A DNA stretch of 64,000 bases. Source: Antechinus flavipes (taxonomy: Eukaryota). The stretch spans positions 717,650,001 to 717,714,000 of the forward strand of contig NC_067398.1 of the NCBI RefSeq assembly GCF_016432865.1. The letters run 5' to 3'. A program made the position numbers and the translations under genes. Position 1 is the stretch's first letter. Each line of letters starts with the position of its first letter. This document shows positions 6,630-49,438 of this stretch, piece after piece. The notes under the pieces were generated by a model. It was not told the origin of the DNA and did not search any database. It worked only from the letters and a program-made list of their open reading frames with translations.

Positions 6630-7080
6630 GCTATTAGCCGCTCTGGGATTGCTTTCTTTCATTGCGGGCTCCCTTTCACTGGAGAAAATGGCTCGGTAAT
6701 GCTTCTTTTATCACAGAATTAGGGGATTTAGGGCCCAGATGTGACAAAGGGACTCTCCGGGAGCCGGGCCTGGGCGCCAATCAGCCCCACATCTCGGGGC
6801 CTGGGAGCAGAGAGGGAAATCGAGGGATTACGGCCGCTGCTCGCTGAGCCTCCGGCCAGATAGCATCTCGGCCGCTCTGGGAGAAAGGGAACGAAATCCA
6901 GGAAGGGGAGGCCGGGCCCAGAACAATGTCCGCCGCCAGCCGGGGGCCGGCTCCGGCCTTTTGGGGAGAGGGATTCAAAAGCCATTAGAGAGGCTTAACG
7001 CCAAGGTTAATCTGCTTTGGCCGTTCATTTGTCAAAAGTGAATTTATAGGTTTGGAGAAATCCTGTCTTTGGGGATGAGG
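6630..7080. promoter_or_regulatory. CpG-rich candidate cis-regulatory element with K50-homeodomain and SOX-type motifs
   Basis: Unique CpG-rich sequence with GGATTA (6825-6830), GGCTTA (6992-6997), TAATCT (7008-7013) and AACAATG (6922-6928). No credible coding exon. Confidence 0.35.
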
Positions 7081-13757: not shown

Positions 13758-16700
13758 CTACAGAGAGAGAAGGACGTCGAAGCGGGTGGGGGAAGGGGCC
13801 CCAGGGGCTCTGTCCGTCATGCCCTTTGACCCCCCCGGCTCCCTCAGGGCCCCCCCCAGACACAGCCCCTCCGCTTCTTGGGAATCCCCCGGTGCCATCG
13901 ACAGGAGCACTTGACCTCTCGGCCAGCCCGGGTCCCTCAGCTGAGGAGCCATGCCGTGCTGGGAGAGCAGGGCCCGGGCCCGCGCCCAGGCCCGCCTCAG
14001 CTCCCGAGAGCTGGCTCCGGACTCCACGGCCTCCCCAGCCCCCCCGGCCCGCGGGACCTCCAGGGCCCGGACCACGAGCTCGGCCTCCACCAGCAGCACG
14101 GCCAGGGCCGTGTGAAGCTTGGGGCAGCCCAGGGCCTTCAGCAACAGAGCGCCGGCGTCGCCTGAAACACACGGGAGATGGGGGCGGTGACGGGAAGGCC
14201 GGGGCCCGGCCTCCGCTCTGAGAGGAAGGCGGGGGTCTGGCACGAGTGTGTGGGGGAGGGTGTGTGCACATATGTTGTTACACCCTGATGCCCCCCCACC
14301 TTGTCAGGCTCCTCCTCAGACGTAAGTGTCCCTCACACCCTCCTCCACACACAGGCACATCACATATGCAAACACAGCACACGCGTCTACACAGGTAAAC
14401 AGCATATATGTCTACACAGGCAAGCACAGCACACACTGCACACACATGTACCCCTCCCCCCCACAGACACACAATGCATTCATACACACGTGTACCACAT
14501 GCATAACACCCACATGTGCACGCACACACATACATACATGTGCAACCCATGCCCCTCCCCCCACACGTGTGCACACACATGCTAAATTCATTCCTAAAGA
14601 CCCGAGCTCCTCGGGGCCGGCCCTGCCTGTGTCCCCTGCCCCTAATCCAGGACCTTGTGCAGGACGGTCCCGAACACCTGCTACTCCCACTCAGCCAGGC
14701 CCAGGCTGGGCCCTCCCCCACGGCGAGAACTTTTCTGGCCCCCCTGGGCTGACGCCCTCGCACCCACCTTGACTCCACCAGAGGCAGCAGCGCTGGAGGC
14801 TCCGGAGGACGCCAGGGGCTCGAGCCTCTGCCCACTGCCGGGCCCGGGCCCTCAGAGGCGCCGCATCCCCCGCTCTGTCCAGCAGCCGGAGCAAGAAGGG
14901 GAGCAGGAGCTGGGCGAACACGGCCGGCTCCGCGAAGAAGTTAGCTCCGTCCTCCTCGTAGAGGCTGGGGGTCCTAGGAAGGGGCGGCCGTGTTAGCCCT
15001 GCCCTGCCCCGGCCCTGAGCGTGGCCAGTCCCGCTCACGCGGCGTGGCTGCCGGGGCGCAGGGTCCCATTCTGGGGCGGTCACGGGCCAGGCAGAAGCAA
15101 CGGCTCCCGGCCACATGCGGCTCGGGGTTTTAGCAGGCCTCTCCTTCAGTCAGTAAGTGAGGCTTCCTGAGCTGGCCGGCCCTTGCACAGGGCCCCAGGC
15201 CAGGCTTGCTAGAATCTGCAAACCCTGGCCCAGACCAGCCCCATCCTAGCGGCTGACCCAGGCTAGCCCACTTCTAGCAGTTAACCCAGGCTAGCCCCAT
15301 CCTAGCAGCTGACCCAGGCTAGACCCCTTCTAGCAGCTAACCCAGGCTAGCCCCATCCTAGCAGCTGACCCAGGCTAGCCCACTCTAGTAGTTAACCCAG
15401 GCTAGCCCCATTCTAGCAGCTAACCCAGGCTAGCCCATCCTAGTAGCTGACCCAGACCAGCCCACTTTTAGCAGCTAACCCAGGCTAGCCCATCCTAGTA
15501 GCTGACCCAGACCAGCCCACTTTTAGCAGCTGACCCAGGCTAGACCCCTTCAACAGCTGATCCAGGTTAGCCCACTTTTAGCAGCTGACCCAGGCTAGAC
15601 CCCTTCTAGCAGCTGACCCAGGCTAGACCCCTTCTAGCAGCTGACCCAGACCAACCCACTTTTAGCAGCTGACCCAGGCTAGACCCCTTCAACAGCTGAT
15701 CCAGATTAGCTCACTTTTAGCAGCTAACCCAGGCTACCCCCATCCTAGCAGCTGACACAGGATAGCCCACTTCTAGAGCTCACCAAGGCCAGCCCACTTC
15801 TAGCAGCTAACTCAGGTTAGCCCCACCCTAGCAGCTGACTCAGGCTAGTCCCCTTCTAACAGCTGACCCAGACCAGCTCACTTTTAGCAGCTGACCCAGG
15901 ATAGCCCACTTCTAGAGCTGACTAAGGCCAGCCCACTTCTAGCAACTGTCCCAGGCTAGCCCCATCCTAGCAGCTGACCCAGACCAGCTCACTTTTAGCA
16001 GTTGACCCAGGTCAGCCCCCTTCAACAGCTGACTCAGGTTAGCCCCATCCTAGTAGCTGACCCAAGGCTAGCCCCATCCTAGCAGCTGATCCAGGATAGC
16101 CCACTTTTAGCAGCTGACCCAGGATAGCCCACTTTTAGCAGCTGACCCAGGATAGCCCACTTCTAAAGCTGACCCAGGCTAGTCCCCTTCTAGCACCTGA
16201 CCTAGGCCAGCCCTCTTCTAGCAGCTTACCCAGGCTAGNNNNNNNNNNNNNNNNNNNNNNNNNNNNNNNNNNNNNNNNNNNNNNNNNNNNNNNNNNNNNN
16301 NNNNNNNNNNNNNNNNNNNNNNNNNNNNNNNNNNNNNNNNNNNNNNNNNNNNNNNNNNNNNNNNNNNNNNNNNNNNNNNNNNNNNNNNNNNNNNNNNNNN
16401 NNNNNNNNNNNNNTGAGGAGGGGTCCTCCTGCCCCCAGCAAATTGATCTGAGGAGCACTGGGATACATAGGGGGAGAGCCTTACCGATTAGCGCCCATCT
16501 CTTCCAGGAGACCCTCCAGATCACACTGGGGAAGATGGAGCATCAGAAGTGGCCAGGTGTCCTCACAGGCCCCAAAGTGTGTCTCAATGGCCTGTAGCAC
16601 CAAGAGCAGCCCCTGGTGGGCCTGCAGTGTTGTGCCAGCCTCCCAGGGCCCGGCTCCCGCCTGCTGGGCCAGCAGACTGGCGAACATGGCTGCTTCCAGT

Positions 16701-19700
16701 CTCACTGCCTGGTCCTCGTCCTGCAGCAGGAAAATGCCAGCGTTCAGAAGCCTGAGGGGAGAGGCACAGTCAGGGAAACCGAGGCACGTTCAGGCCAGGG
16801 GGCGTCAGCCGAGCTATGGAAGAGGAGGGCAGGTGTGACCGAGACACTGCCAAAGGCGCCAGCCTCTCCCCTCGGGCAGCCCATGAGAGCAGCACTTCTC
16901 CCAGCCCCTGGTCTGCACTAGAACTCAAATGGGCCTTCATTATTACAGAGGAAAGGGGACTCCCACATCTGACAAGTGGTGGGGGAACCAGACGGCCCGG
17001 GGTTCCTTCCAGTTCTAGCAATAAGAACCACGGATTTCCATCTTACAGATTAAAAGACTGAGGCCCAGGGAGCGTTCACGATCACACAGCCAGCAAGACG
17101 CAAACCTAGTTCCCGTGACTCCTCGCCCAGCTATCCTGAGTCACCAGGCCCACTGGTGCCCCCCCAATATCCTCACCAGGCCACTGGTGCCCCCCATATC
17201 CTCGCCAGGCCACTGGTACCCCCACCACAACAGCCTCGCCAGCCCATGACCCTGCCACTTCTCCCTTGAGAACCAGTCACATCACCAGTCCTGTGACCCT
17301 CAGAGAGGTCAGGTCTATGGCCTTGGCCGCCCTGCGCTCCCCTCCCCCAAAAGCCCCGCCCTGACCACCCTTTCCCACAAGGAGCCCTCTTCTCCATGAG
17401 AACACAAGGCTCCTTAAAGTCAGCTCTAAACACCTGGAAGAGTAGGGGAAGCTCATGGACGGCCTGGGAAGGCCCTTCAAGGCCCTGGAGTCCCAGCCCC
17501 TCATTTCAGAGAAGAGGCAAGGAGACCCAGAGAGATGAAGCCGAAACGGGACTCGAACCCGGGCCGGGACTCCACCTGGAGCGTTCCTCCCGCTGCCCTA
17601 GGCGACCTTCCCTCCAGCGCACCTGGTTCTTCCTTCTGGGGCCCAGACTAATCCACCTGCTGGGAAACACCTCTCCAGGGTCCCCCAACCCACGCCCCCC
17701 CGGGCTTCCCTGCCAGCCCTGCTCGGGGCCGGGCCCACCGAGTCAGCTTACCGGAGAGCCAGGGCTGCTGGGGAGGGCCCGGAGGCTGCGCAGGCTCCGA
17801 CCACCACCGGGACCCCAGCCAGGCACAGGGACTGCGCTGCCGCCAGTCTCAGCTCCTCACAGGCACGGGGCTCACTCCAGCGCTGGAGAACCAGGCTCCA
17901 GCGGCCCAGGGCAGGAAGGTCCTCGGGCCTGGGGTGGGCACAAAGACAGAAGGGGGGAGGCCGTCACGCCGAGAGCAAAGCCCAGAGACCCCGGCCCGGG
18001 CCACCCCCACCAGCCCCGAGTAGGAAAGCGGAAAGGGCCGAGGGGGAGTTGCGGGGTCTGTGTTCGAGTCCTGACCTGCTGATAAGGAAGGGGGAACAAA
18101 AGGAGGTTACGATGGAAAGGAAAGGTCGTCCTGGACACGGACGGCGTGAGGGTGGAGGGCGTCAGCAGCACGAACAGAGTCCAGCCCAATGGCTGCGGGC
18201 GGCCCCCGGCCCACTTGGACCCTCCATTTCTCCCTCTCTCCAGCAGGGTTGTGAGCCTGCTCCCCGCCATTTACGGGAGCTTAAAGGAGAGAACCTGCTG
18301 CCCCCAAAGCGCCATAGTCTGCGTTGTGTTCTCACTCTTTGCCCATGCCCGTGATTTCCGGGGTGAGGGAACTCCCGTCCGGAACCTCTGGCCCCAGAGA
18401 GAGAGCAGGACCTTAGGGGGGCCGCTTGGACCCGGGGCCATGTGGATTCTCTCTCGACCACAGCCCTCCTGTCCCCGGGCCCCTTCCACCACCCCCTTCC
18501 CCCGAGGGGGCCCCATGGCCAGCCCCGGAGGTCCCGAGGACGGGCAGCGACCTGCCCAAGTGCCCCCGGGGCCCTCCCGTCACTCATCCGGACAGCAATG
18601 GATCCCACCTCAGGCCCCTCTGGACGCCAGGGCTGGCCTCCGTGGCCTCTGCAAAATGGGCATGGGAACAGTGCTCGCCTCCCAAACTGCTGGGGGCCCG
18701 GAGATATGGGAACAGCGCTTTGTAAACTGAAATGCCACAGAAACGCCAGCGAGTCCAGCTGCCGGGTCCAGGGCGGGGTCAGGGGGCGCCCACAAACCCT
18801 TTGTGCATCCTCGGGGCTTGGCAGAATGCATGCAGGAGGTGCTTAATAAAAGTGCCTTTCCTGTGCCAGGGGCCCTCACCCTCTCTCCAAGCTCCCGGAG
18901 ATGGCAGAGACGCTGGGCTCTCCCTGAGTGGGGAGGCCCTCCCCGGCACCTCTGCCCAGAGACCCCGAAGAGGGAGGGTGGCCGCCCTGACCATGGGGGG
19001 TGGCTGCCCTGAGGCTCACAAAACCCATTACAGACAAATGCCCGGGGAGGGGGGCACAGAGAGAGACGTGACTCCCAGTGGCCCAGGCAGCCTTCACACA
19101 CCTTGACTGACCCACCTAATTTATAGGGGGGGCCGAGGGCAGATGGCTGAAGGGGCAAGGACACAGGGTCACAGCCTGGAAGTGACCAAGAGGTCACTTC
19201 ACCCCACATTTACAGATAAGTAAACTGAGGCACAGGAAAGAAAGGTCATCCCGGTTATACGGGGCAGGTGACCCCAAGGTCACTAACTGCCCACCCCCAC
19301 CCCCAGCAGAGCTGAGGAGTATGGGGGAGGGGAGAGGAGACCTTACCCCAATGCCAGGAGCAGGCTGAGGGCGCGCAGTGCCCGGCCCAGGAGGGTGGGG
19401 CTGGTGCCCGCCTTCTCCACCAGTGAGAGCAGCTGGTCCCTGCAGGCTGGGGGCGGGGCAGGTGAGAGTGGGTGGGCACGGGCAGAGGGCGCCTGGTGCA
19501 GGTGCGCCAAGGCCTCCAGGTGCAGCTTCAGGCCTTCCGGGCAGCCCCCGTCCCGCAGCAGCGGCCACAGGGTGTCCTGAGGGAGAAGGCCCCGTCGGAG
19601 GCTGGCCCGCCTCGCTCTGCCCCGCCAGCCCCGGGCCCCCCTCGGGAGCCCCGCCACGGGCTCGGGCCAAGCACGGGCCGGGGCTGCTCCTTCCCTGCCC

Positions 19701-22700
19701 CTCCCCCTCCCCGGGGCTGAGCGGCCCAGACCGGGCAGAAACGTGTTAGGCTGACAGGGGCAGAGAGGCCGGACAGGGGCTCACCAGCAGCAGGGCCCAG
19801 AGGACGCCGGCCACGGGCTCGGGGAGCTCGCCCTCCTCCAGCACCCAGGCCAGGGCGGCCCGATGCACCTCCGGGTCCGCGCCTCGCAGCAGGGAGCCCA
19901 GGGCCCGGGTCCGGGCGGGATCGGCCAGCCTCCCCGCCTCCCTGCAGAGGAAGCGGGCGCACTCCTGGCGCAGCGCGCTGGCGCCCACCTGAGAACCAAG
20001 CCGAGCTGTCAGAGGCACAGCCGCCGGGCCCCGCGGGCAGGGAGCGGTCCCTGGGGCGGGGGGCCCAAGGAGCTGCCTCTGGGGGCCCGTCCCTCCCAGC
20101 CTCAGTCTCCCTCTCTGTAAAGGGGGCATTAACAGCGCTCCCCTTGTTCTGAATCAGGGCCTTCCCTGGCTCCCCTGCCCTCCTCCGCTGCTGCCCCCTG
20201 GTGGGCACTTGGTGGTGGAGCCACCCTGGGCCCTGGATGCCGCCCCCCCTCCCCCCTTCATGGCACCAGGATGTGAATCTGAGTTGGGGCCGCGTACGGG
20301 GCCCCTACCTGTGTGTCCGGCCCAGGAGGGTCCAGCTCCTGGGTCACAGCGGCCTCGACCCGCTCCAGGAAGCCCTGGCTGCAGCCACTGGTCAGCAGGG
20401 AGAGAAGCCGCAGGTAGGCCGCGCGCATCAGCGGGCAGCGCTGGGCGGGCGTGAGCAGCCAGAACATGGCCTCCGCCTTCTGCGCAACAGCCTCCAGACC
20501 GGGGGGGGCCCGGCTGCCGACAGAGAACAGCACGGGCTCAGCCTGTGCCCCCCCCCCCCGGCCCACAGGCCTCTGGTCCCAGACCCCCCCCAGCCTGAAG
20601 TCCAGGCCCCGAAGGGCCTCCCCGGGGGGAGGGGGCGGCTCCCGGGATTGGCTCACCGGGCGCCGTCCTGGGCCACGAGGGCGTGGGCCTGCAGCAGCCG
20701 CCCGTGCAGCGCATTGTGGGGGCCGGGCTCCAGCAGTCCCTGCAGCAGGCGGAGCAGGACGTCCTCCAGTTCCGCCAGAGGCACAAAGGGCACCAGGGCC
20801 CGGGCAGCCATCGCCCGCGTGGCGTAGACCGGGCTCTCTGAGAGACGGAGCAAACACTCCTGGAACCGCGCCGCAGAGCTACGGAGAGACCCCCCGCACG
20901 GTGAGCCCCCGGAGTGGGCCTGGGCCAGAGGGTCGCGCCCCCAGAGAAGGCCAGGCTTGAGTGAGCTCAGGCCCTCCCTGGCTGCCCTTGGTCCGGCTGG
21001 CGCCTGCAGCCCCCTCCCCATCTCCGGTACGCTGGCACAGAAACCAAACATGCGGCAGGGGCCGGGGACCGGGGTCTCCAAGGGGACAAGCGGGAGCCAG
21101 AGAGGGGACCCCGGACGCCCCCTTTTCTCCATCCGGTGGCGGCCGCTGTTCTCTATCGCTTCTCCGGGAGATGTGGGACCTTGTGTTTCCACAGAAACTA
21201 ATGCAAGTAACATATATTGTATCTAGGATATACTGCAACATATCCAACATGTAAAGGACTGCTTGCCATCTGGGGGAGGGGGTGAAGGGAGGGAGGGAGG
21301 GGAAAAATCGGAACAGAAGCGAGTGCAAGAGATAATGTTGTAAAAAATTACCCTGGCCTGGGTTCTGGCAATAAAAAGTTATTATTAAATAAAAATTAAA
21401 AAAAAAAAAAAAGAGACTAATGCAAGTAAGAAACGTTCTGGGAAACCGAGTCTGGTTGGGGACAGATCTGGAGTCCGGACTAAAGCCGAGAGCCCCGAAG
21501 GGCAAGGAAGTGGCTCAGCTGGAGCGTGTGCCCAAGGGCTGGGGGGGCGTTAACCTGCCCCCCAGGAGGAGCTAGGACTCACAGTAGTGATCCCCCCAGC
21601 CCCCCTGCGGGGCCCGGCCTCCCTCCCCCCCACGGGGCCCGGCCTCCCTCCCCCTCCCCCCCCCACGGGGCCCGGCCTCCCTCCCCCCCCCCCCACGGGG
21701 CCCGGCCTCCCTCCCCCTCCCCCCCACGGGGCCCGGCCTCCCTCCCTCCCCCTCCCCCCCCCCGCAGGCCCGCCCCCCCCCCCCCTGCGGGGCCCGGCCT
21801 CCCTCCCTCCCCCTCCCCCCCACGGGGCCCGGCCTCCCTCCCCCTCCCCCCCCAAGCCCCGGCTCCCAGGAGCCCCCGGGCCCAGCACCTGCTCAGGCAC
21901 TCCGTGCCGGGCTGCAGCTTGGCCAGCAGGGTCAGGACGGCGTGGAGGTCGGGCCGGAGGCGGCTCTCCCCCCGGCGTCCCAGGGACGAGAGCAGCGGGG
22001 CCAGGAGAACGGCCTCCAGCGCGGGGAACAGGGTGAAAAAAGCTTGCGGGCTCAGGCCCTTGTGGGCGCCGCTGCCCTCGCGGCTCAGGCTCTGACCCAG
22101 CAGCCGGCCCTCGAGGGCGCCTGGGGAGGCAGAACCGGCCCATAAGCCCCGGCTCAGCCCGAGCCCCGGCCCCCGCGAGGGGGAGAAGTGGCCGCAGAGC
22201 CCCCCACTCACCGAAGAGCTGGCTGCCGGCGTTCCTCATGGCCCAGCACGGGGAGCCCAGAGCCCCCAGACACAGCGCGAGCAGCGGGCCGGCCCAGGCG
22301 AGCATCGGGGCCCCCAGGCCGGCCCCCCGCACCAGGGCTTGGAGCACGTGCAGAGCGGAGACCTGCCGGAGAGCGGGCGGCCCATCACCACTGGGGCTCC
22401 TGACCCACCGCCCGCGTCCCAGACCCCGGGGCCCCTCGCAGGGAGGGGAGCTAAGGGTCCGCGACCCACGGCCTCCAATGGGGACGGACCAGCCCCCGCC
22501 ACGCTCAGAGCAAGGGCTTCACACGCTGATGATGAAACGGGGTGGGGGGAGGGGCCTGAGAATGGGGGGTGGGAGGGGCCTGAGAATGGGGGGATGGGAG
22601 GCGCCTGAGAATGGGGGGTGGGAGGGGCCTGAGAATGGGGGGATGGGAGGGGCCTGAGAATGGGGGGTGGGAGGGGCCTGAGAATGGGGGGTGGGAGGGG

Positions 22701-25700: not shown

Positions 25701-28700
25701 CGGAGCAGGAAGGAGTTGAGAATGAGGCTGGGGCAGCCCGGGGCCGGGCCCTCCTCTTTGGGCCTGGGGACTATGTTCTGGAGGGTATCACTGTCCACTC
25801 TGACAAAGAGAAGGCACGTTGCCGGCCTGAGCCCCAGAGCTCGGGACAGAGAAAATGTCCTGGTCCCCTCCAGCTTCAGGGAGCCAAGACCCCCGAGCCC
25901 CGCCGCCTCCTTTTCCCCCAGTGGGCCTCAGGGGCAGGTGGTGGAGAGTGACCCCAAAGGGAGACCCTCAGGACTGAGGAGGGCAGGAGAAGGGAGGGAG
26001 GGAAGTCTGTCTCTGCCCACCCCGCCCCCACTCTCCAGCCCAAGGCCTTACTTCTGCAGCAGAGTCTGCATCATGAGGGCCCCTGCTTCCACCTCCTGCC
26101 CGCGGGCACTGCTCAGGGCCTGACACGCCCGCTCCAACAGGGCTCCGGCCAAATCCACGGGCAGGGCAGGGGGGAAGTAGAGGTGCAGAAGGTGGGTGGC
26201 CGGCTCCCGGATCTGGGGGGGGGGGGGGAGCAGAGGTCGGAGGCTTGAGGGGCCTGGCTCAGGCTCTGCACCTGCACCCCGCGTTAGGACAGCACCCTCC
26301 GACCCATCTCCCTGCTTCTAACCCAAATGTGGACGGGCCGCAGACCTGCCCAGAGTCCTGTCGTCCTGGCTCTCATCCCCAGCCGCCTCTTAGACCTCCT
26401 GAAGCATCCCAGACCCCTCGGGCCCTCCCCTTTCTGAAGATATTTCTCTGGGAGGGGAGTCCTCATTCCTCCCCCCCCCAGGCTCACAGAGTGAAGGTCA
26501 TTCTCAGCTCCTCCCCTGCTCATCACCACCCCCATAGCCAAGCTTTGCAGCAGAGGGAATCTCCGTGCAGGGAGGTTTTTGCCTCAGTGACCTCACAGTC
26601 TGGACTAACTGACCCCCGCCCCCGTCCTAGGACGTCATCTAGCTCCTAGCACTAGAGCCGGGCGGGATCCCGGAGGCCCCCGAGTCCAGAGGAGGAGACA
26701 GGCCCAGGATCTGAACCCTGGGCTTGGACTCCACGGCCGGGGCTGCCGGGACAGGAAGGCTCTGCAAACACTCAGCTCCCCTAGACATGTCACAGATTCA
26801 TCAGACCTGGGGGGTGGGGGGGAGGTCACTCCTAAAGCCGAGGGTGGGGCCCCATCCGCTCCTCCCCGCCTCCCCGGCACCCCCTGCCTTCCCGGTCTCA
26901 CCTCACTGGTGCTGTCCTGAAGGCAACTGAGCAAGGCCAGCAAGGTGGCCCTTGAGGTGAAGTCCCAGCGGCCGCTGCGCCTGGCCCAGCTCAGCAAAGC
27001 CGCCATGTTGGCTGTGGGGCGATGGAGAGGGCCGGGGTCAGCGGGGAGGGGGTGGAGGTGGCAGGAGGAGGGTGAGAACAAGGTCGGAGGGGGGGAACTC
27101 ACGGGGAGGCTGGCCCTTCTTCCTCTCGGGGCTCCAGCTGTCCGTGCACGTGGCCAGCAGGGCCTCCAGCAGGAGCAGGGAAGTCCTTCGGCGCTGGAAG
27201 CCCGAGGCCGGGCCCAGCTGGGAGACACTGAGCTGCAGGAGCCACTCCACGAAGTCTGCGGGTGACAAGAGGAGGCTGGAAAGGCCCCACACGGGGGCCT
27301 CCCCCAGGAGCCCACATTCTCCCCCAGGGGGCCCACAAAGCCCGCCGGGAGTCCACGTCTCAGGCGCCTGCGGCCCCCAGCCCACCTCCTTAAGCCCCGG
27401 TCAGAGTCCACTCCCTCAGGTCCCACCCCCAAGGTCTCCAGGGTCTCCAGGTCTCCAGCTCCCTCCCCAGCCCAGCAGGGCCCCAGCAGCAGCCCAGGGA
27501 GCAGGCGTGGGCTCACCTCCGGTGAGCAGGAGAGGCTCCGGGCTGGGCCTGAGCCTGCTTCCCCCTGGCCGCGGAGCACAGCCAGGGCACTGTCCCGAAG
27601 CCGGCCTAGGAGCCTGCTCACGGTCGCCTGCAGCAGCTGCCGGAAAGAGGCCGAGGAGCCACTGAGGTTCAGCCAGAGGAAGCCCTGGAGGACGGCCAGC
27701 TCCTCGGGGCCGGGGGCCTGGGCAGAGCCAGGCCCCCCACACAAGAGGCTCGCCCCCGCCAGGCGCACGGCCTCGTCGCCACACGCCAAGCACGCGGCCA
27801 CGCGGGCCGGGAGCTGGCCGGCTGCCCAGGGGGCCTGGCCCAGAGCCTTGCGAGTCTTCTGCAGGGCTGCCCAGCCCCGAAGGCGGGCCAAGCCCGGGCC
27901 TGCAAAAGCCTTCTCCAGGAGGCCGGCGGAGGCCGGGAAGAGCTGGAGGGTGTGGGGGAGCAGGGAGCTGGCTGCCCGGCCCTGCAGGGCCGCCACTGGG
28001 GACTGCAGGGCCTCCGCCACGGGGGGCAGCCAGTGCCGGGCCCACCGCTCAGCCAGGGCCTCCTCGCCGGCCCCGGCCCCTGGGACGGCCCACTCCCCCC
28101 GCTGGGCTTGCAGGAAGCAGCGGTAGGTGTCCACGGCCGGGGGGCTCAGGGGATTGGTGGAGAGGCAGAGCAGGAGCTGCTGCGGGAGCTCAGGGAGCGC
28201 AGCCAGGACCTGGAGGGACAGGGCCACGTCAGCCACGGCGCCCGCCTGCCAGGCTACCCCCTCCGACCACAGGCCCACCCGGAAGCCCAGGAAAGGGGCA
28301 CCGTGCCCTCTGCCCGCTCCAGTCGGGTCCCGCTGGCCATGGGCCACGGGCCACGGGAGCTGTGGCCGAGAACCGCCCAGGGCTGGGAACGCCCTGCTCC
28401 CCCTTCCTGAAGCCCCAGTGCACCCTGGGTCAGTTGCCTTGCCCCCTCTACCAGGCACTAGCAGGGAGCTCCAACATCCTTCAGTCTGGCCCAGGAAGGC
28501 CACAGGGCCCCTGCTCGGCCCTGGCCATGGTGCTGAAATGCTGCCCACCAGGACTGGGGCTCCCCCCCGCCCCCCAGCCCTCCGCTGCCCAGAGCAGCCG
28601 CTAAAACCTGGCTCTGGGAGCCCCTCATCTCCTCCCCCTTGTCCCCCCCCACTGTTCTGAGCCCTGAGGGAGGGCGCTCACCCTTTCCGAGCCCAGGAAG

Positions 28701-31700
28701 GGAAGCAAGGCGCAGAGGACGGGGTAGCGGGCCTTGGTCGGCCAGGGCAGGCCCCGGACCCTCTCTAGGAGCTCCTCATAGAGGGGCCGCTCTGCTCCAT
28801 CCCCGAGGTGCTCGCACTCCTTCCCATAGAGCTCCAGAAAGAGGCTGAAGGCGCGCAGAGTCGCCTCGGACAGGCCTTCCAGCTGTGGGGAGGCACAAGC
28901 CCCATGTGCCAGAGAAGGGCTGCCTCCTCCCCCTCCCTCCCCCTCGCTCCCCTCCCCATGTGCCAGGGAAGGGCTGCCTCCTCCCCCTCCCTCTCGCTCC
29001 CTCCCCCTCCCCGTGTGCCAGGGAAGGGCTGCCTCCTTCCTGCCCCTCCCCCACGCAGGCTTTGGCACTTCTCCTCTCTCTCCCTCCCTCTCTCAGCCGC
29101 GCTGCCGCTGGTGGAGACGCCTCCGCCTGCTCTGGGACTTGGGGCTCGCGCCTGGGACTGCTTATCACTCCCCCCCACCCCGTTACAGACCCGGGGCTGC
29201 CCCCGAGCTCCCAGCTGGAGATCGGAGCAGGAGTTTGGGGGCCCAAGCCGCGGGTGTTTCCGCCATCATGGTGTCAGACCAGCCCCCGCAGTGTGCCCAG
29301 GGCCACATCCCTGGCTCCATCTTCCCGGGCCCTTCCAGGGGCCTCGCCGCCCACTCTGCACAAGGGACTCCGACACCGGGAGGAGAGGGAGGCCCAGCCT
29401 GGCCTAGGGGGAGTCTCCTACCGGGCTCTCGGTGTTGCTCCAGATGAACTGAGTCAGCCGCAGGGCCCCCTGGGAGGTCCCGCTCAGGAGTCGCCCCATC
29501 CAGATGCCGGGGGTGCTTTCGTGGAGCCGTCGCAGCCACAGCAAAAAAGCTGGGAAGGGGCAGCGGACACTGTCAGGCCCCTGGCCCTGGGGGTCTGTCT
29601 GAGACCCCCTGTGTGCCCAAGGCCTTCCGGTGAGGCCCCCAGGCCAGGAGCTTCATCCCACTTCCCAGGGCCCGGCCCTCGCTCGGCCAGAACCACTGTC
29701 CAGTATCAGGGCCGCCTGTGGCCTCCTCCCCTCCCACCCAAGGCCAAGACTGTTGCTGTGTGGGGACTCTGGCTTCTCCCCAGAGGAAACCTATCCCCAG
29801 AAGCTCTGCTCCCAAACGCCAACCTAGGCCTGGAAATTCTCCTCCTGCCCCAGGCCCCCAGCCCCAGCAGGCCCCAGGTCCCAGGCCCCCAGCCCTAGCA
29901 GGCCCCAGGCTCCAAGCCCCCAGCCCCAGCAGGCCCCGGGTCCCAGGCCCCCAGCCCCAGCAGGCCCTGCCCCCATCATCCATTCCCACTGGCCCCAAGA
30001 GTCCTCACCCTGCAGGAGGAAGGCACGGTAGTCCATGTTCTTCTCGCTCCAGCCTGGGCCAACGGGGGGTATCAGGGCCCCCAGCAGCAGACAGGCCTGG
30101 GATTTGGGGGGAAACGCTATGAAGAAAGTGGCCAGCGTGGCCCCAAGGCTCGGGAGCAGAGGAGGGGGCCCTCGGGGACAGCCTCGCCCAGGCAGGGCAG
30201 ACGCCCCTGGCAAATCCCTGGGCTGACATGAGGATGTGAGGGCCGAGTGGGGCCCCTCAGCCCCTCTGCCTCCTCATTCCTCGGTTCAGGGCACCCTTGC
30301 CACCAGGGCCTCCTCCAGGCCCCCCAAGTCCAGGCCAGGACTCACCTTCCCCCCAGGGGGCCTGAAGGTCAGGATGTCCTTCCTGCAGGAGGTCAGAAGG
30401 CCTCGGCTCAGCACCAGGTCCTCCAGCCCATCGGGGTTCATGGGGGGCACAGCCACCCGGAGCCCCCCAAGCCTCTGCTCCCCAGGGTCTAAGGACAAAC
30501 CAACCCGCTCAGAGGAGCCTCCTCCCTTCCCCTGACCGCTCCCTCCGGGCCGAGGCCGCCCAGACCGGCTCCGCTTTCGGCCAGAGGCTCCCTGAGGTTC
30601 GGCTCAGGGCCCACTAGTGACACCCCGACTTCCCGAGGAGGCTCCTGCGCCCTGAGTGAGAGTCCCGAGGGCAGCCCCGGGAGTCCGGCCGACGGCCCGC
30701 ACTGAGTGCAGGGACACTGCTCGGCTCGGGCCCGGGGCCCGGGAGAGGCCGGGAAGGGCTGGCCTCCGGCTCGTCTCTCGCAGCCTCACCTGGGCCGAGC
30801 AGCCGCAGCAGCTGAGACACCGCGCCGGCCCCCGCCTCCGGCGTGGGGGCCGCGTTCACCAGCATGCCCAGGGCTGTGCCAGCCAGAAGCCGGGCATCCT
30901 TGCTGGCCACCTGCAGAAGGGCAAGAGCTGAAGCAGGCGGGCTCCCCTGGGGGCGGTCAGCAGGCCCCGCCCCCTTGGCCCGGGCCACAGGGCTGGCTCT
31001 CAGCCTCAGAAAAGTCTCCTCACCTTTCCCAGGACCACTTGCACCAGGGACTGAAGGATGCTTGCCAGGGGCTCCCCGCCCCCTGCTGGGCTCCAGGTCC
31101 GGGCCCCCACCTCCTCGGGCATGCTCTGGAAAAGCTGGAGGACTAGCTGTGGGCAGAGATCGGGCCCATCCCCCGGTGTGACCGCCAGCCGGCCCCGCCC
31201 CCCTCCCACGGGCCCCCGGAGGGCTTTGGGGCTCTGGGGGCGGCCCTGAGCCCCCCGGGGGCCGCCATCAGGCAGCGCACTCATTGGGGCTCTTGGCCGT
31301 GACCGCTCGGGCCCAGCTTTCCCGGGTGGGGATCCAGGGAGAAAAGGGGGCCCACCTTCACCGCGTGGCAGGCCCGCTCCCCGGCCCCGGCGGCGGGGTC
31401 CCGTAGCACGGAGGCCAGGGTGGAGGCCGCGCGGCCCAGCAGGCTGCCCAGGGCGTGTCTCCAGTGTTCTCGCGCCAGGCTGCTCTCCTCCAGGAACAGA
31501 CACACTGGGCAGAGGGGCCCGCGGGGTCAGGCGGTGGGCACGACGAGGGATCCCCCACCCCAAGGAGCCCCGCCAAGCATGGCCCCCCCTCCCGGGCCTC
31601 CCAGCTCGAGGTCGGAAGGTGGGCGGCCAGAGCTGTGGCCCCGGTTCCCAGGACAAAGGCCTGGCCTCTGCCCATTCTCTGGCCCCGTCCCTAGGGACGG

Positions 31701-34086
31701 GACCCAGTCTCAGAATGGGGGAGGAGCGGGGCAGGGGAGGAACTGACCTGTGCGAAGCTCTCCCAGAGTCAAGGCCTAGAAGGGAAGGGAAGGGAGGGGC
31801 AGGCGTCAGCCCCCACAGAGGGCCCGGGCCCGTCACTGCCCACCCCACCCCCACTCCCAGCCCCCCTCACCTGCTGGCCCTGGGTCAAATGGCCCAGCAT
31901 CCCGGCCACTTCCTCGGACGCCACGCTCTCCCTCCCTGCAGCCAATGTGGCCACAATCTGCAGGAAGGGCAAAGGGGGTGAAATGCAACCAAAAGGGGGC
32001 CAGAGCTCGAGCTGGGGGGGGGGCTCTGTCAATCTGTGGGTCCTTGAGTGGGCTCCAGACCCAGAAAGCTCCTCTGCTGGAGGCCCCCAGTGTCGCTGTC
32101 ATGATATCAGCTCCCTGGGAGCAGCTTCCCAACTGGGACCAACCTTTCTTCCTCCTTTCTTCCCTTCTTTCTTCTTTCCTTCCTTCCTCCTTCTTTCGCT
32201 ACTTCCTCGGTCCCTCCAGCCCTCCTTGCTTCTTTCCTTCCTTCTCTTCCTTCCCTCCCTTCTTCTCTCCTCCATCGCTCTCTTCCTTCCTTATTCTTTT
32301 TCTCCCCCTTTTCTTCCTTCATCCTTTTCTTCCTTCCTCCCTCCTTTCTTTCCTTCCCTCCCTCCTTTCTTTCCTTCCTTCTACCTTTCCCACCTCCTTT
32401 TTTTCCTTCTCTCCATCCCCTTCCTTTTCTCCTTCCTTCCCTCCCTTCTTGCCCTCCTTTATCCCTTCTTCCCTTCCTCCTACCCCCTTCCTTTTTCTTC
32501 TTTCCTTCCCTCTCTCCCTCCCCTTCCTTCCTTCCCTCCTGTTCTTCCTCTCCCTCACTTCTTCCTTTTACTCTTCCCCTCCTTTCTTTTTTTCTTCCTT
32601 CCTTCGTTCCCTCTCCTCCTTGTTTCTCTCCCTCCTTTTTTCCTCCCTCCCCCCTTCCTTCCTTCCTCCTCCTGTCATTGAAGGTTCTCCCCATCTACGT
32701 TCCCATCTCTGGCTCTCTCTTTACCCCCCCCCCATGCACCGTGGGTTCCCCGCCCCCCTTCAGGGCACTTGCTCGTGCTGGTCCCCCCTCACTCAGACTC
32801 TCAGAGCTTTGGACTCAGTTTGCCCCTTCCCCTGACCCGGGCACAGCCCCTCTAGGAGGAAGCTGTACAGCTATCAGCAACCCATTTGACAGATGATGAA
32901 ACTGAGGGTCTGAGAGACTGGGGGTGACGGGGTCCCAGCCGGGAAAGGACGCACTCCAACTCCGAGACGCCCCCTCCCGGCCAGGCCGGCAAGTTCAGGG
33001 TTATGGGGTCTCCCAGCCTGACCGGGGGAGCTGGCTCTGAATCCGGGCCCTGCCCTCAGTGTCACTGGGCGCCCCTCCCCCCTCCGGGGCCCGGGGCAGG
33101 GGAGGGCGGTCTGGGCGGGCACCCACCTTCTCCAGCTTGCGGAAGGCCCCCAGGCTGCCCGTGGCCTCGAGCTGGCAGCTCAGGAGGCAGCGCAGGAAGG
33201 GCTGGGCCTCGGGGGCCGCCAGCTGGGCCCAGGCCTGGCTCAGAGCGGGCAAGAGGCTCCCGGCCTGCGCCAGGCTCTGCTCCTGGCACCGGCGGCCAGA
33301 GGCCCTGCAGGGATAGGACGGTGCGCTGGTCAGTGACCCCCCTGGGGGAAGGGCGCCCCCACCCACCAAACCAGCTGGCACTGAGCCCCTCCCCCCGCAC
33401 TGGGCTCAGTCCCGCCTCGGCCCCAGCTTAGCCCAAACCCAAAACCGAAGGTTTCATCGGCCCCCCCCTCACCCCCCCCTAACATCCACGTGCGCCCCCC
33501 CCCCCCACAGCGAGTGACCTGGGGTGGGGGTGGGGCTCTCGGGGAGCCCGACCTTGCTGGGGCGGGGCGGGCCATGCTCGCAGTGCTCTCCCTCCCCCGT
33601 GCAAGGGCGGGGGGCCCGAGGTGACGCGGGCTCAGGGGGCCTCAGGCAGGAGCCATGAAGGGAGACAAAGGGAAGGGCAGACTTTGCACACGGTCAGTGC
33701 TTCATAAATGTTTGAATGACAGGGATATGGAGGACTCTGGGAGAGACAGGTTTGCGCAAAGAGGCAGAGAGACGCAGGGCCCGAGCCCCAAACCTAGACA
33801 AGCCCAGAAGTCAGAGATGGAAGTCGGCTCCATCCCTTAGGCGTCCGGCGCCCCCTGGAGGCGGAAAATATCTCGGCACGGGAAGGACAGAGGTGGGCGG
33901 GGCCTCGCTGAAGGGCGGGGAGATTGAGGGAGGGATCCATTCTAGAGGGAAAGAAGCCGAGGCTCGGGGGCGGGGCCCGGCTCACCCGGCGAATCGTTGG
34001 AGCATGCGCAGCAGTTCTAGCAGGGCAGGCGGCGTGGCAGGGCCGCAGCTGGCCAGGCAGAGGCGGGTCTGGTGCTCGGCGCCCAT
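13758..34086 (-). CDS. THADA/Trm732-family armadillo/HEAT-repeat protein paralog (DUF2428 region), 31 exons, about 1910 aa, one apparent 1-nt frameshift in exon 12
   Basis: Exons 5'->3' on minus, all GT-AG: 34086-33986, 33304-33127, 31957-31871, 31775-31748, 31504-31356, 31146-31024, 30910-30790, 30488-30346, 30096-30009, 29549-29422, 28882-28682, 28209-27517, 27255-27103, 27011-26902, 26212-26052, 25799-25630, 24947-24768, 24609-24446, 23835-23686, 23461-23357, 23237-23037, 22362-22212, 22120-21889, 20878-20657, 20513-20309, 19988-19785, 19576-19347, 17928-17752, 16751-16485, 14973-14768, 14161-13758 (TAG). 29 of 30 junctions are phase-compatible; total 5732 nt is 1 short of a multiple of 3. 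Strong Kozak GCCACCGCCTCCATGG. THADA-family motifs: LPWPTKARY, ILTCCWISAKE, RCRHWGALE, VTRRAAGFP, DLPQVSALHVL, CWAMRNA, LLQDEDQAVR, LYEEDGANFFAE. Confidence 0.85.
14330..14582. repeat. CA-rich low-complexity repeat (intron 30 of THADA-like gene)
   Basis: Degenerate (CA)n/(CACAT)n tract; gives H/T-rich and C/V-rich pseudo-ORFs. Confidence 0.85.
15228..16238. repeat. Minisatellite, about 27-28 bp unit (ctagcagctgacccaggctagccccatc), about 35 visible copies, running into an assembly gap
   Basis: Visible tandem units with variant ends (cccactt/gacccctt/ccccatc); abuts the N-run. Confidence 0.95.
16239..16413. other. Assembly gap (175 N)
   Basis: Run of n characters. Confidence 1.
21211..21415 (+). 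mobile_element. 5'-truncated young LINE-1 3' end with poly(A) tail and 14-bp target-site duplication
   Basis: ACTAATGCAAGTAA at 21197-21210 and 21416-21429; internal G-rich L1 3' UTR, AATAAA 21370-21375 and an A-tail. Antisense to the host gene, intron 23. Confidence 0.9.
21605..21850. repeat. GC-rich minisatellite (about 30 bp, ggggcccggcctccctccccctccccccccac); G-run rich on the minus strand
   Basis: About 8 tandem copies in intron 23. Confidence 0.9.
22545..22755. repeat. Minisatellite, 24-25 bp unit (gggaggggcctgagaatggggggt), about 9 copies
   Basis: Visible tandem units; GWEGPENG repeats in the ORF track. Intron 21. Confidence 0.95.
28900..29050. repeat. Short tandem repeat, about 55 bp x3 (cccatgtgccagggaagggctgcctcctcc...)
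   Basis: Copies begin near 28901, 28955 and 29011, just upstream of the exon 11 acceptor. Confidence 0.8.
29850..29968. repeat. Short tandem repeat, about 31 bp x4 (ccaggcccccagccccagcaggccccaggtc)
   Basis: Visible tandem copies in intron 9. Confidence 0.8.
32140..32670. repeat. TC-rich (TTCC)n low-complexity tract
   Basis: Polypyrimidine tract in intron 2; gives F/S/P/L-rich and E/R/K/G-rich pseudo-ORFs. Confidence 0.95.
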
Positions 34087-37200: not shown

Positions 37201-37477
37201 GATGCCCTGGAGGCAGGGAGTGCACTGGGGGTGGGAGATGGACAGGGCAGCTAGGAGGGCTGGAGGCTTAGGAGGGAGGCCAGGAAGGAGGCCGGGAAGG
37301 AGACCCAATGGCCACGGGGGCTGCCGCTTCCCGAGGTTTCAGGGAGAGGCTGGGCGTCCACCCCGGCCGGGCCAGGAGGTTGGTCCTCGGGCCTTCGGGC
37401 TCTGGGGTTCCCCGGGCGGCCATTTGTGGGGCGGCGAGTGCTCCGGCATGACCGGCTGGGTTTTTTTCAGGGTCACC

Positions 37478-49400: not shown

Positions 49401-49438
49401 TGGAGATCGTCAAGCTGCGGCGGGAGCTGGGCACCTGA
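37478..49438 (+). CDS. Myb/SANT-like DNA-binding domain protein with C-terminal coiled coil (MSANTD/NAIF1-type, Harbinger-derived), 2 coding exons, 388 aa
   Basis: Acceptor tttttttcag at 37470, ATG 37478, exon to 38414 (AAC G|GTGAG, phase 1); 10.8-kb intron; acceptor ccttcag|49209, phase-compatible, TGA 49436-49438; 937+230=1167 nt. N-terminus KRIKFSEEEKIVILEEFSLRKDIL...RQQAWEEITMAVNSLNPLVQRTPEEVRKKWKNM matches the Myb_DNA-bind_5 pattern; C-terminus LQTEILELQKETLQLQKEKILLEKEKLVLEIVKLRRE is a heptad coiled coil. Extra internal exons are not excluded. Confidence 0.82.
39335..39930. repeat. 134-bp direct duplication (39335-39468 and 39797-39930) flanking a 328-bp LTR-like insert
   Basis: Both copies run ggctaaggattggaagggg...ggagggggtgag with about 6 mismatches; the insert ends in ...ttccaaCA. 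Confidence 0.85.
40826..41480 (-). mobile_element. LINE-2 fragment (3' part), interrupted by BovB
   Basis: gcatttattaagcacc is the reverse L2 3' terminus; L2-like purine-rich sequence resumes at about 43740-44400 after the BovB copy. Confidence 0.65.
41485..43720 (-). mobile_element. RTE-BovB LINE, decayed reverse-transcriptase/3' portion
   Basis: Minus-strand peptides AGLKLNIKKPKILATGPITSWQ...SRITGDSDCSQEIK (41960-42190) and RVPQTARRANRCVLKEIDSDCSLEGQKLK...GRQRMRW (41550-41879) match BovB ORF C-terminal motifs; many frameshifts. Confidence 0.88.
43740..44400 (-). mobile_element. LINE-2 fragment (continuation)
   Basis: gagagattgaggctcgaaaggcagatttg...gagaaaggaaatggacggagccctaaaggacccct, L2-like as recalled; decayed. 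Confidence 0.5.
46675..46966 (+). repeat. Minisatellite, 33 bp x about 9 (ttagaacaggggatgtcagggctgggagggggc)
   Basis: Visible tandem units (LEQGMSGLGGG periodicity); reverse complement of the array at 50798-51231. Confidence 0.95.
48856..49090. repeat. Minisatellite, 46 bp x about 5 (ggccagaatccaagcatcttccggtccagggtcccagcatcctcag)
   Basis: Visible tandem copies ending about 120 bp upstream of the 49208 acceptor. Confidence 0.95.

What the first reader, a model, noticed from the sequence alone, without database searches (positions are those of the whole stretch)
13758..34086. Near-intact second THADA-family gene: compact 31-exon paralog beside SLC25A1
Seen: 31 GT-AG exons giving about 1910 aa, with THADA/DUF2428 motifs in the expected order and no in-frame stops apart from one phase break. 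Established: THADA (yeast Trm732) partners FTSJ1/Trm7 for tRNA Nm32 methylation and regulates SERCA; the canonical human gene is very large and lies at 2p21, not near SLC25A1. Inference: this is an ancient, largely uncharacterised paralog kept in this lineage, perhaps a second or tissue-specific tRNA-modification adaptor or scaffold.
Basis: partly seen in the sequence, partly recalled or inferred. Interest (0 to 1): 0.8.

Follow-up and report, generated by a model that had tools for sequence, protein, structure and literature searches.

The report
Ancient second THADA-family gene in marsupial
The window holds a real 31-exon gene for a second, very old relative of the tRNA-methylation helper THADA; most animals keep it, it did not turn up in placental mammals, and its function has never been studied.

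Summary
On the minus strand, 34086 to 13758, lie 31 exons, all GT-AG. They total 5732 nt and encode about 1910 aa, with Pfam TPR_Trm732, DUF2428 and TPR_Trm732_C in order. There is one 1-nt frame break, in exon 12 near 27540-27549. The N gap (16239-16413) sits inside intron 29 and removes no coding sequence.

The window matches the Antechinus flavipes reference. RefSeq already annotates this gene as "thyroid adenoma-associated protein homolog", with a model that works around the frame break.

It is not the canonical THADA ortholog. Trees place it in a separate clade L with the "THADA-like" genes of marsupials, birds, reptiles, amphibians, fish, lamprey and hagfish, and also amphioxus, echinoderms, molluscs and some arthropods. 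Canonical THADA forms clade C. Abalone and several fish and a shark carry both, and an AU test rejects a vertebrate-only duplication (p 1.2e-5). No placental or monotreme copy appeared among the listed hits.

Marsupial copies are under purifying selection. The predicted fold best matches human THADA. THADA motifs 1-3 are kept, but only some FTSJ1- and tRNA-contact residues. A role as a tRNA 2'-O-methylation adaptor with different specificity is plausible but untested. A canonical THADA in this genome could not be checked.

The parts
13758..34086 (-). Whole coding span of the THADA-like (clade L) gene: 31 exons, about 1910 aa
   Evidence: Gene model. Identical to RefSeq protein P0093 of Antechinus flavipes over shared exons.
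33986..34086 (-). Exon 1 (ATG at 34086)
   Evidence: The Sarcophilus and Trichosurus proteins start here. The Dromiciops X1 model extends further upstream.
33127..33304 (-). Exon 2
31871..31957 (-). Exon 3
31748..31775 (-). Exon 4, a 28-nt microexon (ALTLGELRT)
   Evidence: It matches Dromiciops ALALGDLRT.
31356..31504 (-). Exon 5
31024..31146 (-). Exon 6
30790..30910 (-). Exon 7
30346..30488 (-). Exon 8
30009..30096 (-). Exon 9
29422..29549 (-). Exon 10
28682..28882 (-). Exon 11
27517..28209 (-). Exon 12, the largest (693 nt). It carries the TPR_Trm732 match, the Gln equivalent to human Q680, and the frame break.
27540..27549 (-). Site of the single 1-nt frame break (two CCC runs), in a length-variable loop of the protein
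   Evidence: Sarcophilus reads GPAPEPLLLTG at this point.
27103..27255 (-). Exon 13
26902..27011 (-). Exon 14
26052..26212 (-). Exon 15
25630..25799 (-). Exon 16
24768..24947 (-). Exon 17
24446..24609 (-). Exon 18 (CCW motif; the Trp is equivalent to human W1054)
23686..23835 (-). Exon 19 (ends with the R-H-W of motif 1, CRHWG; the Gly is at the start of exon 20)
23357..23461 (-). Exon 20
23037..23237 (-). Exon 21 (DUF2428 core, motif 2 TRRAAGFP)
22212..22362 (-). Exon 22 (WAMRNAG)
21889..22120 (-). Exon 23, after a 91-nt intron
20657..20878 (-). Exon 24 (TPR_Trm732_C; helix SPVYATRAMAARALVPFV and motif 3 NALHGRLL)
20309..20513 (-). Exon 25
19785..19988 (-). Exon 26
19347..19576 (-). Exon 27
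17752..17928 (-). Exon 28
16485..16751 (-). Exon 29
16239..16413 (.). Assembly gap (N), inside intron 29 (16484-14974). No coding sequence is affected.
14768..14973 (-). Exon 30
13758..14161 (-). Exon 31 with the stop codon (ends at 13758)
37202..49438 (+). Neighbour: a Myb/SANT (Myb_DNA-bind_5) gene, head-to-head with the THADA-like gene. The same neighbour is found in Trichosurus and Vombatus.
53632..59055 (-). Neighbour: a mitochondrial-carrier gene (SLC25A1-like exons)

Best explanation
This is a genuine protein-coding gene kept by selection. It is the Antechinus ortholog of the 'THADA-like' lineage, here called clade L (zebrafish si:ch211-225b11.4; RefSeq 'thyroid adenoma-associated protein homolog').

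Shown: clade L is a paralog of canonical THADA/Trm732 that separated before protostomes and deuterostomes diverged. It persists in cyclostomes, fish, amphibians, sauropsids, marsupials and many invertebrates. No placental or monotreme copy was retrieved.

Shown: it encodes a roughly 1910-aa all-helical solenoid whose C-terminal 1160 residues are predicted to adopt the THADA core fold.

Inferred (about 0.35-0.4): like THADA, it holds a tRNA in its basic cylinder and presents it to an FtsJ-type 2'-O-methyltransferase, most likely FTSJ1. Because the aromatic residues that stack on anticodon-loop bases in THADA are replaced throughout clade L, it would serve a different tRNA set or position.

The single frame break in exon 12 is most likely a homopolymer error of the PacBio CLR assembly in this very GC-rich locus (about 0.7), and otherwise a very recent lesion.
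For: Gene structure:
- 31 GT-AG exons, collinear with three other marsupial proteins.
- Strong codon-position GC periodicity.

Family membership:
- Pfam domains in order.
- P0093 against human THADA 8y2o_A gives E 8.9e-48.
- AF2 model: pLDDT 82, pTM 0.78.
- Foldseek top hit is 8y2o_A, E 1.4e-23, TMq 0.66. Generic HEAT proteins score TM 0.33 or less.

Paralogy:
- Clade L (support 100) and clade C (support 99) are separate in a tree built under LG+C20 and rooted on Balamuthia; an earlier LG+G4 tree gave the same split.
- Clade-specific sequence signatures agree with the tree.
- Haliotis rufescens and H. cracherodii each carry one gene of each clade.
- Cetorhinus, Scleropages, Diretmus, Larimichthys and Nerophis also carry both.
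- The AU test rejects vertebrate L plus C as one clade: lnL difference 358, p 1.2e-5.

Constraint:
- At 311 columns conserved in non-mammalian L orthologs, only 5.8% vary among four marsupials, against 29.5% of the other columns (p 3e-22).
- Antechinus and Sarcophilus differ at 1 of 311 conserved columns and at 109 of 1399 other columns (p 5e-9).

Functional residues (with PMC12145424 and PMC9088939):
- Motif 1 R-H is kept. Motif 2 RR-AG-P is kept with S to A; the matching yeast S750A variant complements. Motif 3 N..HG.LL is kept.
- W1054, Q680 and a basic residue at the R199 position are kept.
- FTSJ1 contacts P1358, R1363, R1368 and N1401 are kept.

Assembly: PacBio CLR with wtdbg2 and Pilon; genome GC is 36% against 66-72% at this locus.
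Against: - No transcript, protein or interaction data could be reached.
- dN/dS could not be computed because no ortholog DNA was obtainable.
- Five of the nine FTSJ1-contact residues of THADA are not kept: F1321 is H, F1398 is G, Q1400 is H, Q1449 is A, and C1393 falls in a gap.
- F799 is T and Y843 is Q. Mutation of Y843 abolishes human THADA activity. E1225 is A.
- FTSJ1 partnership and tRNA binding are therefore not assured.
- The frame break is present in the reference, and RefSeq kept it, routing its model around it.
- The tree root rests on a single long amoebozoan outgroup.
- The clade for the AU test was named after a first tree had been seen.
Confidence: 0.8

Rival explanations
1. 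The gene is, or is becoming, a pseudogene in Antechinus flavipes. On this reading the 1-nt deletion in exon 12 is real and truncates the protein after about 737 codons.
For: The frame break is in the reference sequence. With the conserved splice sites the raw reading stops at codon 737. The RefSeq model needs intron read-through plus an inferred 56-nt GC-AG mini-intron (27311-27256) to stay in frame.
Against: - It is the only lesion in 5.7 kb of coding sequence and 60 splice sites.
- Substitutions since the split from Sarcophilus avoid conserved columns almost completely: 1 of 311 against 109 of 1399.
- The break is in a C homopolymer in a 70% GC locus of a CLR-based assembly.
- It falls in the most length-variable loop of the protein, so even an in-frame bypass would leave the folded core unchanged.
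Confidence: 0.15
2. It is simply the fast-evolving canonical THADA ortholog of this marsupial, moved next to SLC25A1.
For: It has the same Pfam architecture and about the same length as THADA.
Against: - It groups with clade L with full support, away from clade C.
- It carries the clade L signatures CRHWG, TRRAAGFP and WAMRNA, not SRHRGAFE, ATRRSAGIP and WAVRNSS.
- It is only about 21% identical to human THADA over the structural alignment.
- The Myb-gene neighbour is shared with other marsupial THADA-like genes.
Confidence: 0.01
3. The paralog arose in the vertebrate whole-genome duplications (an ohnolog of THADA), not earlier.
For: Both copies are present in sharks, teleosts and tetrapods, and lamprey and hagfish have a clade L copy. 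That distribution is what an ohnolog would show.
Against: - Invertebrate sequences split between the two clades, following sequence signatures.
- Two abalone species each have one gene of each clade.
- Two different crinoid species, Anneissia and Antedon, fall in clades C and L respectively.
- The AU test rejects vertebrate monophyly, p 1.2e-5.
Confidence: 0.03
4. Clade L proteins have left tRNA methylation and act as a different kind of solenoid scaffold, with another partner or substrate. Non-tRNA roles have been ascribed to THADA itself, for example in SERCA regulation and thermogenesis.
For: Aromatic anticodon-loop contacts (F799, Y843) and several FTSJ1-contact side chains are replaced in the whole clade. 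The two paralogs have coexisted for more than 500 million years, which argues for distinct functions. PMC9088939 notes proposed non-tRNA roles of THADA and Trm732.
Against: The three motifs defined by tRNA-modification work, W1054, Q680 and the helix carrying P1358, R1363 and R1368 are conserved across clade L from molluscs to marsupials. That conservation is hard to explain without a THADA-like nucleic-acid and partner interface.
Confidence: 0.35

Closest known systems
Human THADA (tRNA (32-2'-O)-methyltransferase regulator; PDB 8Y2O with FTSJ1 and tRNA)
   Same: - Same Pfam architecture and similar length.
- It is the best sequence match in the PDB (E 8.9e-48) and the best structural match (TMq 0.66).
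- Motifs 1-3, W1054 and Q680 are kept, as are FTSJ1 contacts P1358, R1363, R1368 and N1401.
   Different: - It belongs to a different ancient clade, with about 21% identity over the structural alignment.
- F799 is T, Y843 is Q, E1225 is A, Q1400 is H, F1398 and F1321 are not kept, and the motif 2 Ser is Ala.
- The gene is compact: 20 kb with a median intron of 320 nt.
- No placental ortholog was retrieved.
Yeast Trm732 (partner of Trm7 for Nm32)
   Same: The DUF2428 domain carries the RRSAGLP-type motif. The natural Ala at the Ser position corresponds to the S750A variant, which still complements in yeast (PMC9088939).
   Different: Trm732 is shorter (1420 aa). According to PMC12145424 it lacks the N-terminal tail domain of human THADA. 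Its relation to clades C and L was not tested here.
RefSeq and Ensembl predicted 'THADA-like' / 'thyroid adenoma-associated protein homolog' / zebrafish si:ch211-225b11.4
   Same: These are orthologs of this gene. Identity to the model is 92% for Sarcophilus, 81-83% for Dromiciops and Trichosurus, 46-50% for sauropsids and about 40% for Callorhinchus; fish are 35-40% identical to the Dromiciops ortholog. The Antechinus flavipes RefSeq protein P0093 is encoded by this very sequence.
   Different: These are automatic predictions without functional study. No paper in the searched library names the zebrafish gene. The RefSeq model for this species differs from the model here: it has an alternative start, a retained 50-aa intron segment, and a read-through past the frame break.

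Membership tests
THADA/Trm732 family (Pfam DUF2428 superfamily) | Domain order TPR_Trm732, then DUF2428, then TPR_Trm732_C | tested here: met
   One search tested single exons: 24.8 bits (below the 27-bit cut-off), 45.1 and 52.7 bits, in order. The whole orthologs, including P0093, carry PF25150, PF10350 and PF25151.
THADA/Trm732 family (Pfam DUF2428 superfamily) | Conserved motif 1 (human L1100-G1107, with its R-H) | tested here: met
   The motif reads LLLRCRHWG, with R-H invariant in both clades. Motif definition is from PMC12145424 and PMC9088939.
THADA/Trm732 family (Pfam DUF2428 superfamily) | Conserved motif 2, RRSAGLP, required for Nm32 activity | tested here: met
   The motif reads TRRAAGFP. 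R, R, A, G and P are kept. Ser is Ala in all gnathostome clade L proteins. Yeast S750A retains function.
THADA/Trm732 family (Pfam DUF2428 superfamily) | Conserved motif 3 (human N1401-L1408) | tested here: met
   NALHGRLL against human NHIHGTLL.
THADA/Trm732 family (Pfam DUF2428 superfamily) | Alpha-solenoid fold of the THADA cylindrical core | tested here: met
   AF2 model of P0093:500-1663 has pLDDT 82 and is all helical. The Foldseek top hit is 8y2o_A, E 1.4e-23, TMq 0.66 over 1134 columns. Cavity shape and charge were not analysed.
THADA/Trm732 family (Pfam DUF2428 superfamily) | Residues of THADA that contact FTSJ1 | tested here: inconclusive
   Four of nine are kept: P1358, R1363, R1368 and N1401. 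Not kept: F1321, C1393, F1398, Q1400 and Q1449.
THADA/Trm732 family (Pfam DUF2428 superfamily) | Residues of THADA that read tRNA bases | tested here: inconclusive
   Kept: Q680, W1054, the motif 1 R-H, and a basic residue at the R199 position. T798 is Ser, as it also is in canonical Ambystoma. Replaced: F799 is T, Y843 is Q, E1225 is A.
THADA/Trm732 family (Pfam DUF2428 superfamily) | Binds FTSJ1/Trm7 and supports tRNA Nm32 formation | not testable with these tools
   This needs co-IP, yeast complementation or tRNA modification mapping.
Canonical THADA orthogroup (clade C) | Groups with vertebrate THADA in a phylogeny | tested here: not met
   It falls in clade L (support 100) and is excluded from clade C (support 99).
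Canonical THADA orthogroup (clade C) | Clade C signatures: CCWRSMKE, SRHRGAFELAY, ATRRSAGIPF and WAVRNSSTLLF | tested here: not met
   The window protein has CCWISAKE, CRHWGALEGC, VTRRAAGFPL and WAMRNAGSQLF.
THADA-like orthogroup (clade L; si:ch211-225b11.4) | Groups with the vertebrate THADA-like proteins, and the branching follows the species tree | tested here: met
   The marsupial group has support 100, inside tetrapods, gnathostomes and then vertebrates. Invertebrate L sequences lie outside that in species order.
THADA-like orthogroup (clade L; si:ch211-225b11.4) | Conserved neighbourhood in marsupials | tested here: met
   A Myb_DNA-bind_5 gene lies head-to-head upstream in the window, in Trichosurus and in Vombatus.
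THADA-like orthogroup (clade L; si:ch211-225b11.4) | Coexists with a canonical THADA in the same genome | not testable with these tools
   Coexistence was shown for abalone, a shark and four teleosts. The scan's notes hold nothing on THADA.

The most novel reading that the evidence does not exclude
Animals ancestrally carry two THADA-type adaptors. Clade L is a bilaterian-wide, unstudied second lineage. On this reading it directs FTSJ1, or another ribose methyltransferase, to a tRNA set or position that canonical THADA does not serve. Placental mammals would then have lost this arm of anticodon-loop methylation, which would explain why it has been overlooked in human and mouse work.
Probability: 0.3. 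Interest if true: 0.7.

Novelty: new member of a known kind. Interest (0 to 1): 0.5.

Why it matters
THADA is studied as the FTSJ1 partner for tRNA Nm32 and as a locus linked to diabetes, thermogenesis and cancer. That work rests almost entirely on human, mouse, fly and yeast.

This window shows that a marsupial keeps a second THADA-type gene under constraint. Following it outwards shows that the gene belongs to a lineage as old as bilaterians. That lineage coexists with THADA in abalone, sharks and teleosts. It did not turn up in any placental mammal. It retains the family's functional motifs but has systematically different tRNA-contact residues.

This gives a concrete, testable question in organisms that are easy to work with (zebrafish, frogs, chicken): is there a third FTSJ1 adaptor, or another THADA-like pathway, that placentals gave up?

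For genome annotation, it also flags a RefSeq model distorted by a probable homopolymer error in an extremely GC-rich locus.

Tried and rejected
- dN/dS: DNA of orthologous loci could not be obtained. A protein-level constraint test was used instead.
- Canonical THADA in a marsupial or in this genome: the scan's notes have no THADA entry. The protein searches list only the best 120 hits, so marsupial clade C proteins never surfaced. This was left as untestable.
- Arthropod distribution of clade L: the search with Strigamia P0056 returned only itself and one amphioxus hit, which is uninformative.
- AU test on the full 39-row mixture-model data set did not finish. It was rerun on 20 rows and 1407 columns.
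- Expression data: no supplementary files of the Antechinus genome paper are held.
- A single exon against the PDB gave only E 0.1 to THADA. The full RefSeq protein was needed.
- No AATAAA or ATTAAA within 1 kb downstream of the stop, so the 3' end is undefined.
- Rejected readings: canonical THADA ortholog and vertebrate-only ohnolog (see rivals).
- An alternative in-frame splice (donor 27517 to acceptor 27298) has a poor acceptor and no ortholog support.
Full report
**Observation**

The region is very GC-rich, 0.57-0.74 per 2 kb. Minus-strand ORF fragments gave Pfam hits in the order expected for THADA/Trm732: TPR_Trm732 at 26635-28548, DUF2428 at 22971-23681 and TPR_Trm732_C at 20653-21213.

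An HMMER search of the largest exon against 1.8 billion representative proteins found 66 relatives. The best was a Dromiciops gliroides protein at 80% identity. Its 1920-aa isoform was used as a guide for tblastn and for a splice-junction optimiser.

The resulting model has these features:
- 31 exons on the minus strand, from ATG 34086 to the stop at 13758.
- All 30 introns are GT-AG, with a median length of 320 nt.
- The exons total 5732 nt.
- One exon is a 28-nt microexon, at 31775-31748.

The model is collinear with the Sarcophilus, Dromiciops and Trichosurus proteins, with only small internal indels and divergent ends. Codon-position GC is 0.757, 0.533 and 0.857, against 0.662 in introns.

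**The gap and the frame break**

The N run at 16239-16413 begins 71 nt downstream of the exon-29 donor (16485|GTAAGG) and lies inside intron 29. The exon 29/30 junction reproduces the ortholog sequence without any missing residue. Nothing about the reading frame depends on the gap.

The one break is in exon 12. Up to ...GEAGSG the reading frame is the one shared with the orthologs. From the two CCC runs at 27547-27540 onwards, the conserved peptide (...PEPLLLTG, then splice, then DFVEW) is in the frame shifted by one base. Read literally with the conserved splice sites, translation stops at codon 737.

The window is the Antechinus flavipes reference, or is indistinguishable from it. RefSeq protein P0093 is letter-for-letter the window's translation, including intron-encoded residues. 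That model keeps the frame by reading on through the true donor and then, as inferred from its sequence, removing a 56-nt GC-AG mini-intron (27311-27256). This looks like a work-around rather than biology.

The assembly was made from PacBio CLR reads with wtdbg2 and Pilon. The genome averages 36% GC (PMC9290055), whereas this locus is 66-72% GC. A residual homopolymer indel is therefore plausible. The break also falls in the most length-variable loop of the family.

**What the gene is**

Named orthologs are annotated as 'THADA-like' or 'thyroid adenoma-associated protein homolog'. They occur in eight marsupials, turtles, crocodilians, many birds, squamates, amphibians, teleosts, bichirs, chimaera and sharks, plus hagfish and lamprey. 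The zebrafish-derived name si:ch211-225b11.4 appears on UniRef entries. No placental or monotreme protein is among the 120 best hits, although these reach down to fish at 35-38% identity.

A second search retrieved canonical THADA of sharks, teleosts and amphibians. Several species appear in both lists: Cetorhinus, Scleropages, Diretmus, Larimichthys and Nerophis.

The first tree used 45 proteins and 1865 columns. It separated the THADA-like group (support 99) from canonical THADA (support 100) and placed the window's protein with Sarcophilus inside marsupials.

**An older duplication than expected**

In that first tree a grasshopper and an abalone protein sat with canonical THADA, while amphioxus, echinoderms, a hemichordate, Lingula and a scallop did not. 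Short signatures agree with this split:
- Clade C: CCWRS.KE, [ST][RK]HRGAFE.AY, ATRRSAG.PF and WAVRNSSTLL.
- Clade L: CCW[VL]..KE, CRH.GA.EGC, [SV]TRR[SA]AG.P and WA[MI]RNAA.

Cluster look-ups then showed that Haliotis rufescens and H. cracherodii each have one protein of each type (P0053/P0210 and P0052/P0338). Two crinoid species also split, with Anneissia in C and Antedon in L. Lamprey, a tick, a centipede and a millipede have L-type proteins.

A 39-protein tree under LG+C20, rooted on the amoebozoan Balamuthia, recovers clade C (support 99) and clade L (support 100). Within L, the order Ecdysozoa, Lophotrochozoa, Deuterostomia follows the species tree. An AU test on 20 proteins and 1407 columns rejects uniting the two vertebrate groups (lnL difference 358, p 1.2e-5).

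There are three caveats. The tree has a single long outgroup. Composition is heterogeneous. The tested grouping was named after a first tree had been seen. The co-occurrence in abalone does not depend on the rooting.

**Is it maintained?**

Ortholog DNA could not be fetched, so dN/dS was not possible. A protein-level test was used instead, on 311 alignment columns that are at least 94% conserved among 18 non-mammalian clade L proteins:
- All four marsupials keep the consensus residue at 89% of these columns.
- Only 5.8% of these columns vary among marsupials, against 29.5% of the other columns (odds ratio 0.15, p 3e-22).
- Antechinus and Sarcophilus differ at 1 of 311 conserved columns and at 109 of 1399 others (p 5e-9).

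The gene has thus been under purifying selection up to the recent past. If the frame break is real, it is very young.

The long marsupial stem branch (0.7) goes with a strong GC-driven shift in amino-acid content. The share of G, A, R and P is 0.39, against 0.23-0.26 in reptiles and fish.

**How it may work**

The RefSeq protein matches human THADA (PDB 8Y2O) with E 8.9e-48 over the DUF2428 and C-terminal region. An AlphaFold2 model of residues 500-1663, built with 34 clade L sequences, is confident (pLDDT 82, pTM 0.78) and all helical. Its best PDB match by far is 8y2o_A (E 1.4e-23, TMq 0.66); generic HEAT and karyopherin folds score TM 0.33 or less.

Human residue numbers were mapped through the printed alignments and an amphibian THADA. 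They were compared with the structural and mutational papers (PMC12145424; PMC9088939).

Kept in the window protein and across clade L:
- The motif 1 R-H.
- Motif 2, as RRAAG[FL]P. The Ser to Ala change equals the yeast S750A variant, which still complements.
- Motif 3, N..HG.LL.
- W1054 and Q680, and a basic residue at the R199 position.
- The FTSJ1-contacting helix, with P1358, R1363 and R1368, plus N1401.

Replaced throughout clade L:
- F799 (to T) and Y843 (to Q), which stack on A38 and A36 of tRNA-Phe. Mutation of Y843 abolishes human activity.
- E1225, Q1400, F1398 and F1321.

The most economical reading is a THADA-like tRNA-holding adaptor for an FtsJ-type methyltransferase, with a different anticodon-loop specificity. 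I put this at about 0.35-0.4. A diverged scaffold function is about equally possible.

**Comparison with what is known, and novelty**

The gene is already predicted in RefSeq for this species and many others. A published synteny figure lists a 'THADA' among 22q11-type genes such as SLC25A1, ESS2, GSC2 and TSSK2 (PMC9614664).

No paper in the searchable library names the zebrafish gene or discusses a second THADA lineage. The gene call is therefore not new. What appears undescribed is that it belongs to a bilaterian-wide sister lineage of THADA for which no placental copy was retrieved.

**Context in the window**

A Myb/SANT (Myb_DNA-bind_5) gene lies head-to-head about 3 kb upstream. The same arrangement is found in Trichosurus and Vombatus. 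A mitochondrial-carrier gene with SLC25A1-like exons lies at about 53.6-59 kb on the minus strand. Earlier notes of the scan place ESS2 about 24 kb before the window.

**Verdict**

- The function is untested.
- The gene is already annotated.
- Interest is moderate.

Noticed in passing
window 27256-27517 and 28210-28360: The RefSeq protein for this gene (P0093, 1663 aa) differs from the ortholog-guided model. It starts inside intron 10 and retains 50 intron-encoded residues before exon 12. It also reads about 70 residues through the exon-12 donor and rejoins by an inferred 56-nt GC-AG intron. This is probably an annotation work-around for the frame break.
   Followed up: partly
window 37202-38467 (+), extending to about 49438: A gene with a Myb_DNA-bind_5 domain (E 9.7e-17) lies head-to-head with the THADA-like gene. 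The same neighbour occurs in Trichosurus and Vombatus. The two genes may share a bidirectional GC-rich promoter region at about 34.1-37.2 kb.
   Followed up: partly
window 21580-21850 and 22400-22900 (introns 23 and 21): GC-rich short tandem repeats lie inside introns. They translate as runs such as GGRGREAGPRGG and PPILRPLPP and create long spurious ORFs on both strands.
   Followed up: no
window 13758-34086 compared with the genome average: Composition is extreme. Exons are 71.5% GC, GC3 is 0.857 and introns are 66%, in a genome reported at 36% GC. The share of G, A, R and P amino acids is 0.39, against 0.23-0.26 in reptile and fish orthologs. This would fit GC-biased gene conversion on the marsupial lineage.
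   Followed up: partly
window 5541-6722: A CT-rich, low-complexity stretch of about 1.2 kb gives 320-390-aa pseudo-ORFs rich in L, S, C and F on the plus strand and R, E, K and D on the minus strand. It is probably a simple repeat, not a gene.
   Followed up: no
window 12700-13757: There is no AATAAA or ATTAAA signal within 1 kb downstream of the THADA-like stop codon. The 3' UTR end is undefined. An AT-rich block (GC 0.29-0.38) follows at 8-12 kb.
   Followed up: no
proteins P0052/P0053 (Haliotis rufescens), P0062 and P0025 (crinoids): Invertebrates carry two distinct THADA-type genes. The RefSeq names 'THADA-like' and 'homolog' are applied to both without distinction.
   Followed up: yes
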